Assembly (NCBI RefSeq): GCF_964188315.1
Contig: NC_135664.1
Span: 2,170,001 to 2,234,000, forward strand
Source of the DNA: Podarcis muralis
Taxonomy: Eukaryota
Direction of reading: 5' to 3'
DNA: 64,000 bases
Part shown: positions 7,099 through 41,077 of the stretch, piece after piece
Layout of the letters: the number at the start of each line of letters is the position of its first letter
How positions within the stretch are numbered: position 1 is the stretch's first letter
Translations under genes and position numbers: made by a program
The notes under the pieces: generated by a model
What the model was told of the DNA's origin: nothing
What the model saw: only the letters and a program-made list of their open reading frames with translations
Databases searched by the model: none

Positions 7099-9584
7099 TT
7101 AATTTCTGGTTGTCAGGTGCTCCTTTGTGTTCAGATCAGGCCTCAGCACAATCATGTAGCACTTGGGAAGGAAGATGCAGCCCAGAAGCCCAGCACTGGA
7201 GGCCAACATAGAGAAGATCTGCACGGCCACCATGTACTTGCCCTTGGTGCTCAGGTAGGTGGGCACAAAAGACACCCAAACACTGCAGAAGACCAGCATG
7301 CTGAAGGTGATCAGCTTGGCTTCGTTGAAGGAGCCGGGCAGCTTCCTGGCTAGGAAAGCCACCGTGAAGCAGGTGGCAGCCAAGAAGCCCAGGTAGCCGA
7401 GGGCAACGTAAAACATGGCCACAGACCCTTCGTTGCATTGCAGGATGATCTCTTCCACCTGGGAGCGCATGTCGGGCTCTGGGAATGGGGGAGAAGAGCC
7501 CAGTCAGATGGTGCAGATGAGAACTTGCCCCCCAGAACAGGAGATGACAATGGAGTTGGCCAGACTCTTGCCCAGCCATCTCCTCACCCTGTTCCCGGGC
7601 TTTGTGGCCAGAAAGGCCAGCACCACCGTGATGGTCTTTGCCAAGACAGAAGAAACAGCAGCTGAGAAGATGATGCTGAAGGCCGTTTGTCGGAGAAGGC
7701 AGGTCTCTTTCCTTGGGCGCCCGATGAAGAGGAAGGAGGACAAAAAGGAAAGCAGGAGGGAGACGAGGAGGATGTAGGAAAGGTCCCGGTTGTTGGCTTT
7801 GACTATGGGAGTTTCCTTGTATTTAATGAAGATTCCCAACACAGTGCCTGCTGTTATAGATAAGAAGAGGGCAACGGAAGCTAAAACCATTCCCAAATTT
7901 TCTTCATAAGCCAGGAAGGTGGTAATCTTGGGGACACATTGATCTCTGTCCTTGTTTGAATGGTGATCTTCTGAGCATTTGGTGCAATGTTCTGCATCTG
8001 GGGAAGAGAAAAAGAGTGGCTGCAACATCACTTACATCCCTGATGATCTGAACTCGATTACATTTTGAAGAAATCCTAGAGATTTCTTCCTTATGGTCAT
8101 TCCTTTCAACTCTCTTCCAGGATGTAATGAAGGTGATTGTAAAGACGTTGAGGAAGGAGCCACATTCCCCAATGTCTGCAGAAATCTCACAAAAAGTGGG
8201 CGAGACTGGATTACTGCCCTGTGTTTACTCTCTCCAGAAATACCTTCCCCCTTGGCGTCACCCACCTTCCTGGGCGGAGAAGGTCCCTTCCGCACACCGA
8301 GCACAAGCATAGCAGCAAATGGGCTTTCCTTCTAGAACCACCTTGGCATATCCAGGTCGACATTTTTCATTACACCTGGAACGAGGCACGGCCTAACCTG
8401 AAAGACAAGAAGGTGCAAGAAAGGGGAACAGTTAGGAGTATTTGTTTGTATGTTACTCCCTCATAGAGTGAATTCAAACGGATCTTTGGGCTGCAGCCTT
8501 TGACCCCTCATCAGGGTCCTTTCAACCCCCCACTGACCATTGGGGTGACCAGAATATCTTGTTCTTCATAATTCGTTCAGGACAACTGAGGTTTGCGCCA
8601 CAGGCCTCTGATTCCTCTTCTCCGTTTACCTGCTTCCCTGCTTAATAAATCTTCAAAGAAAATGGCAATAGAGTCTAAAATGTGATTTCCCCAAAGTTCA
8701 GGATTCGGATAATCTCTCAATCACTAATTAAGACAAATTTAATATAACTTTTCCAAATATTGGTTTCCCTCACTCTGTTTTTGAGGCATGCAAGGTTTCC
8801 TCTTATTGCTGATGAATGTCCTAGTTATTTCTAGTTCATATGCCATTCCTTAACATTAACCTTATATTACAATAGGGTTTTTTTTTTAACTTCTCATCCT
8901 TCACCAACAGCCGTGCACTTCTCAATTTCTGCACATACAATAGTTTAACATTTGCAACATCTACAAGTGAGCTTACTCCATAAATTTAAAATATCCACAA
9001 TAAATCAGTAATTATCATTTCTAAAATAAATTACTTTCCATCCTTCTGCATGTATGAAAACCCAATAGTTCACTTTTACTAGGGGCTTTCCCTTTTCTTC
9101 TTATCTACGTAGTCCTTTCTGTCGAAGATTCTGGTGTCTTCTCTGAGGACCTCTGTGCTCTATCCTTTCTTTGAGCACCCCAAATTTACCTCCTATCTCA
9201 GCTGCTGTGAAAAGAAAGAGTGGTGGTTGCAGCTGTTATTGACGGTCAAGACACCATTGGTCAACCTGATATCCTGATATGGTCATTTTTCAGCGGTTGT
9301 TTAAGGAAAAACATAATAATCATCTCCTAGCCTTCTCCCTTTGTGATTTACCCTACCTTATTGAATTTCTTGGGCCACTCAATGGCTTCTGGGTTAATGG
9401 TGAACTTTATTCCAGCAGACGTCTCTCTCCTTATATTCCCAATTTTCACAATGTCATAAGAGATATTGGGAAACATCACCCAGTTCACAATATCAAAGTC
9501 CGCTGGTAGCTCCCAGTTCTCATCCAAGCACAGTCTGCCTCTGGAAGTATTCAGGCACTGGATTTCTCTTAAGAAAGGGTGAAG
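7099..9584 (-). pseudogene. Vmn2r: V2R vomeronasal type-2 receptor, exons 4-6 (9357-9584, 8266-8392, 7099-7997), with a nonsense mutation
   Basis: Class C GPCR 7TM motifs ([21 protein letters not shown]) and cysteine-rich domain exons. TGG>TGA at 7504-7506. No exons 2-3 seen. Confidence 0.93.
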
Positions 9585-10085
9585 CTGGAATGGCAGGGGA
9601 AAACACCAGCATTAAGAAAACGGGAAGCCAAGATGGATATCTCAGTCCTACTCACTTCAACCTCTTATGATTTGGGGCTGCGTGTATCTCATGTAGACTG
9701 GAATTCCTATTCAGCCATTTTTATTACTAAAGACCCTGCAAGTGCCCCAATTTTCCCGGGATGTCCCTGAATTAGAGACAGTTTTTCATTTGATCCTGGA
9801 ATTTCCCAACTTTGCTTAGAATGTCCCTATTTTCATTGGAGAAATGTTGGCAGATGTGGAGTTATCCGACCCACAAGGCGTCCAATCCTATATCGGGAAT
9901 TTTTATTATGTTTAATATTTTAGTATGAATTTCTTTATGTTGGGAGCTGCCCAGAGTGCTGAGGCAACCCAAAAAGACGTGTGGGGTATAAAGAGTGCTA
10001 TTTTTCTATGGCACCCCCCTGAGAGGTGCCAAAACTGAGTTTCAATGAGTTCCGCCTTTAAAAAGCTCTGGATATCAACAGTAAA

Positions 10086-38090: not shown

Positions 38091-38591
38091 TTTACTGTTG
38101 ATATCCAGAGCTTTTTAAAGGCGGAACTCATTGAAACTCAGTTTTGGCACCTCTCAGGGGGGTGCCATAGAAAAATAGCACTCTTTATACCCCACACGTC
38201 TTTTTGGGTTGCCTCAGCACTCTGGGCAGCTCCCAACATAAAGAAATTCATACTAAAATATTAAACATAATAAAAATTCCCGATATAGGATTGGACGCCT
38301 TGTGGGTCGGATAACTCCACATCTGCCAACATTTCTCCAATGAAAATAGGGACATTCTAAGCAAAGTTGGGAAATTCCAGGATCAAATGAAAAACTGTCT
38401 CTAATTCAGGGACATCCCGGGAAAATTGGGGCACTTGCAGGGTCTTTAGTAATAAAAATGGCTGAATAGGAATTCCAGTCTACATGAGATACACGCAGCC
38501 CCAAATCATAAGAGGTTGAAGTGAGTAGGACTGAGATATCCATCTTGGCTTCCCGTTTTCTTAATGCTGGTGTTTTCCCCTGCCATTCCAG

Positions 38592-41077
38592 CTTCACCCT
38601 TTCTTAAGAGAAATCCAGTGCCTGAATACTTCCAGAGGCAGACTGTGCTTGGATGAGAACTGGGAGCTACCAGCGGACTTTGATATTGTGAACTGGGTGA
38701 TGTTTCCCAATATCTCTTATGACATTGTGAAAATTGGGAATATAAGGAGAGAGACGTCTGCTGGAATAAAGTTCACCATTAACCCAGAAGCCATTGAGTG
38801 GCCCAAGAAATTCAATAAGGTAGGGTAAATCACAAAGGGAGAAGGCTAGGAGATGATTATTATGTTTTTCCTTAAACAACCGCTGAAAAATGACCATATC
38901 AGGATATCAGGTTGACCAATGGTGTCTTGACCGTCAATAACAGCTGCAACCACCACTCTTTCTTTTCACAGCAGCTGAGATAGGAGGTAAATTTGGGGTG
39001 CTCAAAGAAAGGATAGAGCACAGAGGTCCTCAGAGAAGACACCAGAATCTTCGACAGAAAGGACTACGTAGATAAGAAGAAAAGGGAAAGCCCCTAGTAA
39101 AAGTGAACTATTGGGTTTTCATACATGCAGAAGGATGGAAAGTAATTTATTTTAGAAATGATAATTACTGATTTATTGTGGATATTTTAAATTTATGGAG
39201 TAAGCTCACTTGTAGATGTTGCAAATGTTAAACTATTGTATGTGCAGAAATTGAGAAGTGCACGGCTGTTGGTGAAGGATGAGAAGTTAAAAAAAAAACC
39301 CTATTGTAATATAAGGTTAATGTTAAGGAATGGCATATGAACTAGAAATAACTAGGACATTCATCAGCAATAAGAGGAAACCTTGCATGCCTCAAAAACA
39401 GAGTGAGGGAAACCAATATTTGGAAAAGTTATATTAAATTTGTCTTAATTAGTGATTGAGAGATTATCCGAATCCTGAACTTTGGGGAAATCACATTTTA
39501 GACTCTATTGCCATTTTCTTTGAAGATTTATTAAGCAGGGAAGCAGGTAAACGGAGAAGAGGAATCAGAGGCCTGTGGCGCAAACCTCAGTTGTCCTGAA
39601 CGAATTATGAAGAACAAGATATTCTGGTCACCCCAATGGTCAGTGGGGGGTTGAAAGGACCCTGATGAGGGGTCAAAGGCTGCAGCCCAAAGATCCGTTT
39701 GAATTCACTCTATGAGGGAGTAACATACAAACAAATACTCCTAACTGTTCCCCTTTCTTGCACCTTCTTGTCTTTCAGGTTAGGCCGTGCCTCGTTCCAG
39801 GTGTAATGAAAAATGTCGACCTGGATATGCCAAGGTGGTTCTAGAAGGAAAGCCCATTTGCTGCTATGCTTGTGCTCGGTGTGCGGAAGGGACCTTCTCC
39901 GCCCAGGAAGGTGGGTGACGCCAAGGGGGAAGGTATTTCTGGAGAGAGTAAACACAGGGCAGTAATCCAGTCTCGCCCACTTTTTGTGAGATTTCTGCAG
40001 ACATTGGGGAATGTGGCTCCTTCCTCAACGTCTTTACAATCACCTTCATTACATCCTGGAAGAGAGTTGAAAGGAATGACCATAAGGAAGAAATCTCTAG
40101 GATTTCTTCAAAATGTAATCGAGTTCAGATCATCAGGGATGTAAGTGATGTTGCAGCCACTCTTTTTCTCTTCCCCAGATGCAGAACATTGCACCAAATG
40201 CTCAGAAGATCACCATTCAAACAAGGACAGAGATCAATGTGTCCCCAAGATTACCACCTTCCTGGCTTATGAAGAAAATTTGGGAATGGTTTTAGCTTCC
40301 GTTGCCCTCTTCTTATCTATAACAGCAGGCACTGTGTTGGGAATCTTCATTAAATACAAGGAAACTCCCATAGTCAAAGCCAACAACCGGGACCTTTCCT
40401 ACATCCTCCTCGTCTCCCTCCTGCTTTCCTTTTTGTCCTCCTTCCTCTTCATCGGGCGCCCAAGGAAAGAGACCTGCCTTCTCCGACAAACGGCCTTCAG
40501 CATCATCTTCTCAGCTGCTGTTTCTTCTGTCTTGGCAAAGACCATCACGGTGGTGCTGGCCTTCCTGGCCACAAAGCCCGGGAACAGGGTGAGGAGATGG
40601 CTGGGCAAGAGTCTGGCCAACTCCATTGTCATCTCCTGTTCTGGGGGGCAAGTTCTCATCTGCACCATCTGGCTGGGCTCTTCTCCCCCATTCCCAGAGC
40701 CCGACATGCGCTCCCAGGTGGAAGAGATCATCCTGCAATGCAACGAAGGGTCTGTGGCCATGTTTTACGTTGCCCTCGGCTCCCTGGGCTTCTTGGCTGC
40801 CACCTGCTTCACGGTGGCTTTCCTAGCCAGGAAGTTGCCCGGCTCCTTCAACGAAGCCAAGCTGATCACCTTCAGCATGCTGGTCTTCTGCAGTGTTTGG
40901 GTCTCTTTTGTGCCCACCTCCCTGAGCACCAAGGGCAAGTACATGGTGGCCGTGCAGATCTTCTCTATGTTGGCCTCCAGTGCTGGGCTTCTGGGCTGCA
41001 TCTTCCTTCCCAAGTGCTACATGATTGTGCTGAGGCCTGATCTGAACACAAAGGAGCACCTGACAACCAGAAATTAA
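38592..41077 (+). CDS. Vmn2r: V2R exons 4-6 (38592-38819, 39784-39910, 40179-41077), frame open but 5' exons missing
   Basis: 228-nt exon LHPFLREIQ...[12 protein letters not shown]...WPKKFNK, 127-nt CRD exon, 899-nt 7TM exon. Splice phases 0/0/1 are consistent. Confidence 0.93.

What the first reader, a model, noticed from the sequence alone, without database searches (positions are those of the whole stretch)
7099..41077. 34-kb near-perfect palindrome in a V2R cluster
Seen: two ~16-kb arms whose mirrored coordinates sum to 48175-48177 throughout, so net indel drift is only ~2 bp. The spacer is 23186-24990. The arms are not identical: SNPs near 11068/37108, 23130/25045 and 29789, G-run length changes, and a diverged exon 6. 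That argues against a simple fold-back read artefact. Established: large palindromes on mammalian sex chromosomes carry multicopy genes maintained by arm-to-arm conversion. Inference: this is a young or conversion-maintained amplicon duplicating V2R fragments and an unannotated gene.
Basis: partly seen in the sequence, partly recalled or inferred. Interest (0 to 1): 0.85.

Follow-up and report, generated by a model that had tools for sequence, protein, structure and literature searches.

The report
Young 34-kb palindrome of lizard V2R fragments
A wall-lizard chromosome carries two mirror-image, almost identical 16-kb copies of a block holding broken scent-receptor gene pieces and one small unknown gene; it looks like a real, recent duplication of an ordinary kind, not a special sex-chromosome structure.

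Summary
Arms 6843-23185 and 24991-41333 are 16,343 nt each. They differ by 63 substitutions and 6 indel columns (99.58%) around an 1,805-nt spacer.

The differences are not spread evenly. 59 of 63 substitutions lie in two V2R 7TM-exon zones. The 12.9-kb core has three substitutions and three homopolymer length changes.

The window is Podarcis muralis GCA_964188315.1, record OZ076963.1, from position 2,170,001.

Each arm holds only 3' V2R fragments, exons 4-6 and exons 5-6. Each also holds the RefSeq gene LOC144329118 (141 aa).

The outer junction is a mosaic chimera inside a 7TM exon. The inner junction is non-homologous: the left arm stops at the T8 tail of a 250-nt retroposon 3' end. The right copy's intron then continues through the spacer. 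So the right arm is the parent.

Paralogous loci in P. muralis and P. raffonei show the same head-to-head layout at only 87-98% identity.

Best reading: an older inverted pair was recently re-copied arm to arm, or duplicated in inverted orientation, by homology-started replicative repair. Paralogs then exchanged sequence in the exon zones.

Short reads could not settle copy number, so an assembly artefact is unlikely but not excluded. This is a new member of a known kind, of modest interest.

The parts
6843..23185 (.). Left arm of the palindrome (16,343 nt). Inferred to be the derived, inverted copy.
   Evidence: reverse-complement match to 24991-41333 at 99.58%.
24991..41333 (.). Right arm (16,343 nt). 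Inferred to be the parental copy, because its V2R intron runs on into the spacer.
7613..20474 (.). Near-identical core of the left arm (mirror 27701-40563). Three substitutions (11068, 18049, 18386) and three homopolymer length changes in 12,862 nt.
6874..7410 (.). Outer junction. A mosaic zone inside the outer-left 7TM exon and its 3' flank, where the sequence alternates between the left-flank lineage (closest to L002 on another chromosome) and the right-arm type. From 7411 inward it is all right-arm type.
   Evidence: informative-site string and its switch points.
20475..22207 (.). Diverged patch of the inner 7TM-exon zone (mirror 25969-27700). 32 arm-to-arm differences, mostly private to the left copy, a few shared with paralogs on the 14-Mb record.
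   Evidence: The patch nearly coincides with the zone of 50-150x read depth (20200-21999).
23186..23435 (-). Inner-junction filler. A 5'-truncated 3' end of a poly(A)-tailed retroposon, seen as T8 at 23186-23193 on the + strand. It sits between the end of the left arm and native intron.
   Evidence: copies at 14436-14626 and 61363-61459; depth about 110x.
23436..23657 (+). Native V2R intron continuing from the right inner copy. It is homologous, in direct orientation, to 39061-39282 upstream of the right outer copy.
23658..24891 (.). DNA transposon with terminal inverted repeats of about 30 nt, inserted in that intron and absent from the outer paralogs.
   Evidence: the TIRs, and the empty site in the right outer copy; depth 100-290x, and a joint that skips 23659-24892.
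24892..24990 (+). Native V2R intron directly next to the right arm (homologous to 39292-39356 and 39485-39520).
7105..9593 (-). Left outer V2R fragment: exon 6 at 7105-8007 (stop codon at 7504-7506), exon 5 at 8267-8392, exon 4 at 9357-9593. No exons 1-3.
21216..22922 (-). Left inner V2R fragment: exon 6 at 21216-22148 (1-nt insertion at 22118), exon 5 at 22797-22922. RefSeq model of 300 aa.
25254..26959 (+). Right inner V2R fragment: exon 5 at 25254-25379, exon 6 at 26057-26959 (open 310-codon frame 26033-26965). RefSeq XP_077791718.1, 346 aa, NCD3G plus 7tm_3 domains.
38583..41071 (+). Right outer V2R fragment: exon 4 at 38583-38819, exon 5 at 39784-39909, exon 6 at 40169-41071 (open frame 40145-41077).
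15462..17342 (-). Left-arm copy of the small Ser/Arg-rich gene (RefSeq LOC144329118, 141 aa).
   Evidence: gene at L001 329-2209. L001 equals window 15134-36965..
30835..32715 (+). Right-arm copy of LOC144329118.
42023..45110 (.). Older third partial unit outside the right arm, 95-98% identical to 16730-19107. It shows that the tandem unit predates the palindrome.
1..4178 (.). GC-rich 80/170-nt satellite flanking the left side. An inverted 90-nt-period copy lies at 46856-48549, right of the palindrome.
   Evidence: The same satellite lies beside the paralogous units in L002 and L003.

Best explanation
This is a real and recent inverted segmental duplication (a palindrome) in a cluster of truncated V2R gene pieces, about 2.2 Mb from one end of a 78-Mb Podarcis muralis chromosome.

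Shown:

- Two 16.3-kb arms whose 12.9-kb core is about 99.98% identical.
- Each arm is a two-unit tandem array: V2R exons 4-6, then LOC144329118, then V2R exons 5-6.
- The outer junction is a patchwork chimera inside a 7TM exon.
- The inner junction is non-homologous and carries a 250-nt retroposon 3' tail.
- The right inner copy's intron continues through the spacer, so the right arm is the template.

Inferred mechanism:

- An older, diverged head-to-head pair of such units already existed. The same layout is seen at paralogous loci at 87-98% identity.
- A break near the centre was resected into the left 7TM exon.
- That end invaded the inverted, similar 7TM exon of the right outer copy.
- It then copied the right arm inwards for about 16 kb by break-induced replication or template switching.
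- It was finally joined, with the retroposon tail as filler or pre-existing neighbour, to the native intron at 23436.

The few arm-to-arm differences outside homopolymers lie almost entirely where the sequence has tens of near-identical paralogs. I read them as exchange with paralogs: template switching during the copying, or later ectopic gene conversion.

The block has no evident function as a palindrome. It is a by-product of turnover in a chemoreceptor cluster.
For: The clustering of differences gives P about 2e-43.

Content:
- Four 7tm_3 exons.
- Only exons 4-6 or 5-6 of V2R are present, and no N-terminal exons anywhere in the 64 kb.

Source:
- The window is a 100% match to GCA_964188315.1 OZ076963.1.

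Inner junction:
- T8 plus retroposon tail at 23186-23435, with other copies that start with the same T-run.
- From 23436 the spacer is collinear with the intron upstream of the right outer copy.
- Contigs of other runs continue leftwards from 23434 with native-type intron instead of the tail.

Outer junction:
- The left copy is of the L002 type at 30 of 39 informative sites in 6498-6842.
- It alternates in short patches over 6874-7410.
- It is right-arm type at every informative site from 7411 (28 of them in 7613-8100). This is the look of mismatch-repaired heteroduplex at a homeologous joint, not of an assembler's switch.

Differences:
- They have paralog-like content. The ts:tv ratio resembles that of true paralog differences (hand count), and some left-copy residues are shared with paralogs on the 14-Mb record.
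- They lie almost entirely in the zone with 50-150x read depth, which is 20200-21999.

History:
- The head-to-head layout is older than the near-identity. L002 arms are 93-98% identical. P. raffonei L003 has inverted matches of 87-95%.

Mechanism precedent:
- Inverted-repeat-mediated template switching gives a chimeric repeat at junction 1 and microhomology or insertion at junction 2 (PMC11293582).
Against: - No independent molecule was shown to span either junction.
- The single read-laying run gave no single-copy control, because every spacer bin is a transposon or belongs to the V2R family.
- In two other individuals, none of 27 reads over 23194 shows the window's letter. All 13 reads over 23135 carry the right arm's letter. 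So the left-arm/filler junction is unconfirmed outside the assembled animal. About 1-2 reads per animal were expected, so this is weak either way.
- The roughly 20 changes private to the left inner exon need a second event, or a donor I did not find.
- The three core differences are not polarised towards the left arm.
- The 'older inverted pair' at this very locus is inferred from paralogous loci, not from an orthologue.
- Whether the retroposon tail was captured during the event or was already there cannot be told.
Confidence: 0.55

Rival explanations
1. A long-lived palindrome kept near-identical by recurrent arm-to-arm gene conversion, as on primate and mouse sex chromosomes. On this view the diverged exon-6 zones are patches that conversion has not yet swept, or that paralogs keep re-converting.
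For: - The arms meet the operational definition of more than 8 kb and more than 99% identity (PMC8327919).
- The flanks outside the arms are themselves inverted paralogs at 86-89%, and inverted satellites lie on both sides. That fits an old palindrome whose inner part is homogenised.
- Identity rises in steps at the outer edge: 86%, then 92%, then 99%, then 100%.
Against: - The same architecture at two paralogous loci has drifted to 87-98%, so no general maintenance acts on this family.
- The left flank's closest relative is on another chromosome (95%), not the right flank (86%).
- The inner junction is a clean, uneroded non-homologous joint.
- The arm content is gene stumps, so there is no evident target for selection.
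- No arm-specific insertion is present to show age.
Confidence: 0.2
2. An assembly artefact: a false inverted duplication, so that only one arm, or only a small inner inverted repeat, exists in the animal.
For: - The 12.9-kb core differs only at homopolymer-type sites plus one transition. This is what one sequence used twice would look like.
- No read in two other individuals positively supports the left-arm/filler junction.
- Copy number could not be measured.
Against: - A fold-back read artefact has no spacer. Here 1.8 kb of genomic intron plus two transposable elements sits asymmetrically at the centre.
- The arm ends lead into different flanks through a mosaic junction that an assembler would not invent.
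- Divergence is not monotonic from the centre: 2 differences in 22208-23185, then 32 in 20475-22207, then almost none. That argues against a wrong exit from a small true inverted repeat.
- The window has no gaps.
- Arm-only bins 19200-20199 have depth 1.8-7.4, where about 1.3 is expected per copy.
Confidence: 0.12
3. A one-step new fold-back duplication primed by retrotransposition, with no earlier inverted pair. The LINE endonuclease nicked the minus strand at 24990/24991 (5'-CTTCA/AAGAAAA). Reverse transcription added the 250-nt tail. The cDNA end then switched onto the complementary strand at 23436 and the region was re-replicated in inverted orientation.
For: - The left arm ends exactly at the poly(A) end of the tail. 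The nick site is pyrimidine-rich then purine-rich.
- The tail's truncated 5' end meets native intron with 3 nt or less of microhomology, like ordinary 5'-truncated LINE joins.
Against: - It does not explain the homologous, mosaic outer junction in an already inverted paralogous exon.
- It does not explain how a normal chromosome was restored.
- There is no target-site duplication.
- The site is only a loose match to the endonuclease consensus, which I recall from memory.
Confidence: 0.1

Closest known systems
Large near-identical palindromes of primate X/Y and mouse X chromosomes (PMC8327919; bioRxiv 10.1101/800185)
   Same: Inverted arms longer than 8 kb and more than 99% identical around a short spacer. 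Gene copies are mirrored in the arms. Structural change is concentrated at the centre.
   Different: This is a lizard, on a 78-Mb record that is probably an autosome (not verified). The arms carry truncated V2R pieces and one uncharacterised small gene, not intact testis gene families. Conversion and conservation across species are not shown, and paralogous loci have let their arms diverge.
Inverted-repeat-mediated inverted duplications formed by template switching or break-induced replication (DUP-TRP/INV-DUP; PMC11293582, PMC10766186)
   Same: One junction is a chimeric repeat made by recombination between inverted paralogous repeats. The other is non-homologous, with microhomology or inserted sequence. 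The copied segment is inverted.
   Different: No triplicated segment is seen. This is a fixed or segregating germline structure in a wild species, not a new patient allele. The filler is a retroposon 3' tail. The order of events is inferred.
Autosomal palindromic segmental duplications, for example mouse chromosome 12 SD12A1 (PMC13688818)
   Same: Duplicated arms in inverted orientation around a spacer, outside the sex chromosomes, in a rearrangement-prone interval.
   Different: That locus is megabase-scale; this one is 34 kb. I read only that paper's abstract.
Tandem and inverted duplication turnover in vomeronasal receptor clusters (squamate V2R expansion, PMC3590772)
   Same: A V2R family with many recent copies. 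Read depth gives 40-120 near-identical 7TM exons in this species.
   Different: Here only 3' stumps are copied, together with a non-receptor gene and a satellite.

Membership tests
Large palindrome in the sense of Jackson et al. 2021 (PMC8327919) | Inverted repeat arms longer than 8 kb | tested here: met
   16,343 nt per arm.
Large palindrome in the sense of Jackson et al. 2021 (PMC8327919) | Arm-to-arm nucleotide identity above 99% | tested here: met
   99.58% overall and about 99.98% in the 12.9-kb core.
Sex-chromosome ampliconic palindrome maintained by conversion | Lies on a sex chromosome | not tested
   The record is OZ076963.1, 78.07 Mb. Its identity as an autosome or Z was not established. 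Accession order and size suggest an autosome, but that is inference only.
Sex-chromosome ampliconic palindrome maintained by conversion | Arm-to-arm gene conversion shown: arms more alike within a species than orthologous arms between species | not testable with these tools
   No orthologous locus could be fetched. Paralogous loci L002 and L003 have arms of 87-98% identity, which speaks against general maintenance.
Sex-chromosome ampliconic palindrome maintained by conversion | Arms carry intact multicopy protein-coding genes | tested here: inconclusive
   The V2R copies lack exons 1-3, and two of the four 7TM exons are broken. LOC144329118 (141 aa) is intact in the annotation on both arms, but its function and expression are unknown.
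Inverted-repeat-mediated template-switch duplication (DUP-TRP/INV-DUP type) | Junction 1 lies in a pair of inverted paralogous repeats and forms a chimeric repeat | tested here: met
   Mosaic switch from the L002-type lineage to the right-arm type over 6874-7410, inside the 7TM exon and its flank.
Inverted-repeat-mediated template-switch duplication (DUP-TRP/INV-DUP type) | Junction 2 is non-homologous, with microhomology or an insertion | tested here: met
   The 250-nt retroposon tail lies between 23185 and 23436, with 3 nt or less of microhomology at its 5' end.
Inverted-repeat-mediated template-switch duplication (DUP-TRP/INV-DUP type) | An inverted triplicated segment flanked by duplications | tested here: not met
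   The window holds only two copies of the core. The third partial unit, 42023-45110, is older at 95-98%. So this works like the family's mechanism but is not the canonical structure.
Fold-back or false-duplication assembly artefact | Symmetric centre with no genomic spacer, and arms differing only by random errors | tested here: not met
   The 1,805-nt spacer is asymmetric and made of intron plus two transposable elements. The differences are paralog-like and clustered.
Fold-back or false-duplication assembly artefact | Read depth of the arms equals one copy | tested here: inconclusive
   Arm-only bins have depth 1.8-7.4, against about 1.3 expected per copy, but the stretch offered no single-copy control.
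Functional V2R (class C GPCR) gene | N-terminal ligand-binding (ANF_receptor) exons 1-3 together with NCD3G and 7tm_3 | tested here: not met
   tblastn with five full-length V2Rs finds only residues from about 385 onward (about 427 onward in an ~845-aa receptor), and nothing N-terminal in the 64 kb.

The most novel reading that the evidence does not exclude
A diverged autosomal palindrome in a reptile chemoreceptor cluster was re-homogenised over 16 kb in a single arm-to-arm break-induced replication event. That event left both junctions intact: a mismatch-repair mosaic in a 7TM exon, and a captured retroposon cDNA at the centre. It would be a natural, datable example of how 'conversion-maintained' palindromes may in fact be renewed in rare long-tract steps.
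Probability: 0.3. Interest if true: 0.45.

Novelty: new member of a known kind. Interest (0 to 1): 0.3.

Why it matters
If real, this is a well-preserved example of a very recent inverted segmental duplication outside mammals. Both breakpoints are readable at base level, which is useful for asking how palindromes arise and get re-homogenised in fast-turning chemoreceptor clusters.

It does not change what is known about V2R function. The copied receptor pieces lack their ligand-binding half.

For users of this assembly it flags 34 kb where short reads cannot be placed uniquely. It also flags RefSeq 'V2R 26-like' models of 263-346 aa that are gene stumps.

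Tried and rejected
- **Read depth as a copy-number test.** It failed. Every non-arm bin of the stretch is a high-copy transposon or a V2R-family intron. Two of the four runs (X3, X15) gave short contigs with depths in the thousands that cannot serve as a genomic depth measure.
- **Search for long-read runs using the library word SINGLE.** None was listed.
- **'Small true inverted repeat, wrongly extended by the assembler'.** Rejected as unlikely, because divergence is not monotonic from the centre. 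The accession style suggests a recent long-read assembly, but that is inference.
- **Uniform point mutation as the source of the arm differences.** Rejected: P about 2e-43 for the clustering.
- **Random sequencing error as the source of the left inner exon's private changes.** Disfavoured. The ts:tv ratio resembles true paralog differences (hand count), and some residues are shared with paralogs on the 14-Mb record. No donor was found among L002 and the nine other annotated family proteins compared.
- **Pfam on the longer non-V2R frames of the arm.** No hits.
- **Rfam over the whole window.** No hits.
- **Look-ups of the P. raffonei proteins P0153 and P0155.** Not on record.
- **Left flank as the old mirror arm of the right flank.** Weakened, because its nearest relative is on another chromosome.

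Full report
**1. Observation**

A seed-and-extend scan and a BLAST of the two halves find one dominant inverted match. It pairs 6843-23185 with 41333-24991. Each arm is 16,343 nt. There are 63 mismatches and 4 gap openings, giving 99.58% identity.

A base-by-base alignment gives 30 transitions, 33 transversions and 6 indel columns. Mirrored coordinates sum to 48175-48178. The spacer is 23186-24990. The window has no N runs.

Two refinements matter:

- The match runs about 250 nt further out than 7099/41077, but only at about 92% identity there.
- The differences are far from uniform. 27 lie in 6848-7612, 32 in 20475-22207, and 2 at 23126/23135.
- The 12,862-nt core, 7613-20474, has only 11068 (G/A), 18049 and 18386, plus length changes in G11/G10, G11/G10 and C11/C14 runs. 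18049 sits at the edge of a C-run and 18386 in a short CCC/AAA tract.
- The clustering has a binomial P of about 2e-43.

**2. Where it is and what it holds**

A RefSeq protein 99% identical to the right inner 7TM frame led to a locus that matches window 15134-36965 at 100%. The window is therefore Podarcis muralis GCA_964188315.1, record OZ076963.1 (78,068,875 nt), starting at 2,170,001.

- All four long frames at the arm ends are Pfam 7tm_3.
- tblastn with five full-length V2Rs finds exons 4, 5 and 6 for the outer copies and exons 5 and 6 for the inner copies. It finds nothing N-terminal anywhere in the 64 kb. These are receptor stumps without the ligand-binding domain.
- The two right-arm exon-6 frames are open (310 codons). 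The left outer copy has a stop at 7504-7506. The left inner copy has a 1-nt insertion at 22118.
- Between the V2R pieces each arm carries a gene that RefSeq calls uncharacterized LOC144329118 (141 aa), at 15462-17342 (-) and 30835-32715 (+).

**3. Internal structure**

Each arm is itself a tandem array of roughly 14.1-kb period:

- 6843-8691 is a direct repeat of 20954-23221, at 92-97%.
- An older third partial unit lies outside the right arm at 42023-45110, at 95-98%.
- A GC-rich satellite at 1-4178 is mirrored by an inverted copy at 46856-48549.

The tandem duplication is therefore much older than the arm-to-arm identity.

**4. Inner junction**

- The left arm ends at 23185.
- From 23186 comes a T8 run and 242 nt of a retroposon 3' end on the minus strand. 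Other copies, at 14436 and 61363, begin the same way.
- From 23436 the spacer is collinear, in the orientation of the right arm, with the intron upstream of the right outer copy: 23436-23657 matches 39061-39282, 24892-24956 matches 39292-39356, and 24955-24990 matches 39485-39520.
- The 1,234 nt in between (23658-24891) are a DNA transposon with terminal inverted repeats of about 30 nt. The right outer copy shows the empty site.
- Contigs from other runs continue leftwards from 23434 with native-type intron instead of the tail.

So the right inner copy runs on naturally into the spacer, while the left arm is cut off. The right arm is the parent and the left arm is the inverted copy. The only novel joint is 23185/23186 together with 23435/23436. 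No target-site duplication flanks the tail.

**5. Outer junction**

A paralogous locus on another record, L002 on OZ076973.1 (14.0 Mb), matches the window's left flank and outer-left exon at about 95%. The right flank matches them at only 86-89%.

I took the sites where the right outer copy and L002 differ as markers. Read against these markers, the left outer copy is:

- L002-type at 30 of 39 sites in 6498-6842;
- alternating in short patches between 6874 and 7410;
- right-arm type at every informative site from 7411, 28 of them in 7613-8100.

This mosaic is what mismatch repair of heteroduplex leaves at a joint between similar but non-identical sequences. It is hard to get from an assembler.

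**6. The diverged patches**

In 20475-22207 most differences are private to the left inner copy when compared with five other family members. At the protein level some of its states are shared with paralogs on the 14-Mb record, for example QYP against HHS. A hand count gives a ts:tv ratio like that of true paralog differences.

The patch nearly coincides with the zone where two whole-genome short-read runs pile up to 50-150x (bins 20200-21999), against a few-fold elsewhere. That zone is where tens of copies at 97% identity or more exist in the genome.

I read the patches as exchange with paralogs, either template switching during the copying or later ectopic conversion. I did not find the donor.

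**7. Is it an artefact?**

My one read-laying run could not measure copy number.

- The spacer is all transposon or family intron, so there is no single-copy control.
- Two of the four runs gave short contigs with depths in the thousands that cannot serve as a genomic depth measure.
- Arm-only bins 19200-20199 have depth 1.8-7.4. About 1.3 per copy would be expected if the genome is about 1.5 Gb, a size I take from memory. That is not below two copies, but it is weak.
- No read of the two other animals carries the window's letter at 23194 (0 of 27). All 13 reads at 23135 carry the right arm's letter. So the junction is unconfirmed in other individuals. Only 1-2 reads per animal were expected.

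Against an artefact:

- Fold-back read chimeras have no 1.8-kb asymmetric genomic spacer.
- The two arm ends leave into different flanks through a mosaic junction.
- Divergence is not monotonic from the centre: 2 differences in 22208-23185, then 32, then almost none. That argues against a wrong exit from a small true repeat.

I put the artefact reading at about 0.12.

**8. Family context**

- L002 carries a head-to-head pair of the same V2R stumps with arms 93-98% complementary.
- A P. raffonei locus, L003 on CM049767.1 (13.3 Mb), has the same parts: exon 6 (-), exons 5 and 4, then the LOC144329118 homologue, then exons 4, 5 and 6 (+), flank and satellite. Its inverted matches are 87-95%.
- Annotated close family members lie mostly on the roughly 12-14-Mb records of four lacertids. 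Only three are on the 78-Mb record, and all three are in this palindrome.

So the head-to-head layout is old and recurrent, while near-identity is special to this locus. An earlier scan note reports another head-to-head V2R duplication elsewhere in this genome. I did not check it.

**9. Mechanism**

The anatomy has one junction that is a chimeric inverted repeat and one that is non-homologous with inserted sequence. That is the anatomy described for inverted-repeat-mediated template switching or break-induced replication (PMC11293582; PMC10766186, title and abstract only). There is no triplicated segment here, so it is not the canonical structure.

My best model:

- An older inverted pair suffered a break near its centre.
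- The left end was resected into its 7TM exon and invaded the inverted right outer exon.
- It copied the right arm inwards to 24991.
- It was joined to 23436 through, or next to, the retroposon tail.

With 1-3 substitutions in 12,862 nt and an assumed rate of 1-2e-9 per site per year (from memory), the event is of the order of 2e4 to 1.2e5 years old, if no later conversion occurred.

The main rival is a long-lived palindrome kept alike by recurrent conversion. Only an orthologue or population data can separate the two.

**10. Comparison and verdict**

The structure meets the operational definition of a large palindrome: arms longer than 8 kb and more than 99% identical (PMC8327919).

Nothing ties it to sex-chromosome biology. 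The arms hold gene stumps, sex linkage is untested, and conversion is unshown. Autosomal palindromic segmental duplications are known (PMC13688818, abstract only).

It is a new member of a known kind, with unusually legible junctions, and of modest interest.

Noticed in passing
window 1-4178 and 46856-48549; L002 11770-15242; L003 40513-43407: A GC-rich (about 73%) 80/90/170-nt satellite sits next to the 3' flank of the V2R stump at three paralogous loci in two Podarcis species. The association of satellite and unit is therefore conserved.
   Followed up: partly
window 30835-32715 (+) and 15462-17342 (-); third copy about 42386-45110: LOC144329118 (141 aa) is Ser-rich at the N-terminus and Arg-rich at the C-terminus. 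In 5.8 billion proteins it has only one other hit, a 148-aa P. muralis protein named 'formin-like protein 13' (59% identity). It looks like a lineage-restricted gene travelling with the V2R stumps.
   Followed up: partly
window 23658-24891: A 1.23-kb DNA transposon with terminal inverted repeats of about 30 nt (TACCGTA.TTTTCGCTC..AACACGCAC). Read depth of 100-290x at 97% identity or more suggests a young, abundant family.
   Followed up: partly
window 20358-20394: Hundreds of reads in two individuals show a 'goes back 35' joint. This is copy-number variation of a roughly 35-nt GGA-rich repeat downstream of the 7TM exon.
   Followed up: no
L002 (OZ076973.1:5184150-5204941), 1-2256 against 9103-11124: A second head-to-head pair of V2R stumps on the 14-Mb record, 98% complementary over the exon-6 part. 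One 263-aa product there carries four RefSeq accessions, which points to several identical gene copies.
   Followed up: partly
one search hit list: Many squamate 'V2R 26-like' models of about 403-407 aa have only NCD3G plus 7tm_3 domains, across Rhineura, Lacerta, Zootoca and Podarcis. They are either a conserved short receptor form or a recurrent annotation of 3' stumps.
   Followed up: no
Close relatives of these stumps are annotated mostly on the smallest (12-14 Mb) records of four lacertids. The three copies on the 78-Mb record may be a recent interchromosomal colony near the chromosome end (2.2 Mb from it).
   Followed up: no
window 7504-7506 and 22118: Both left-arm 7TM exons are broken, one by a nonsense codon and one by a 1-nt insertion. 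Both right-arm exons keep open 310-codon frames.
   Followed up: partly
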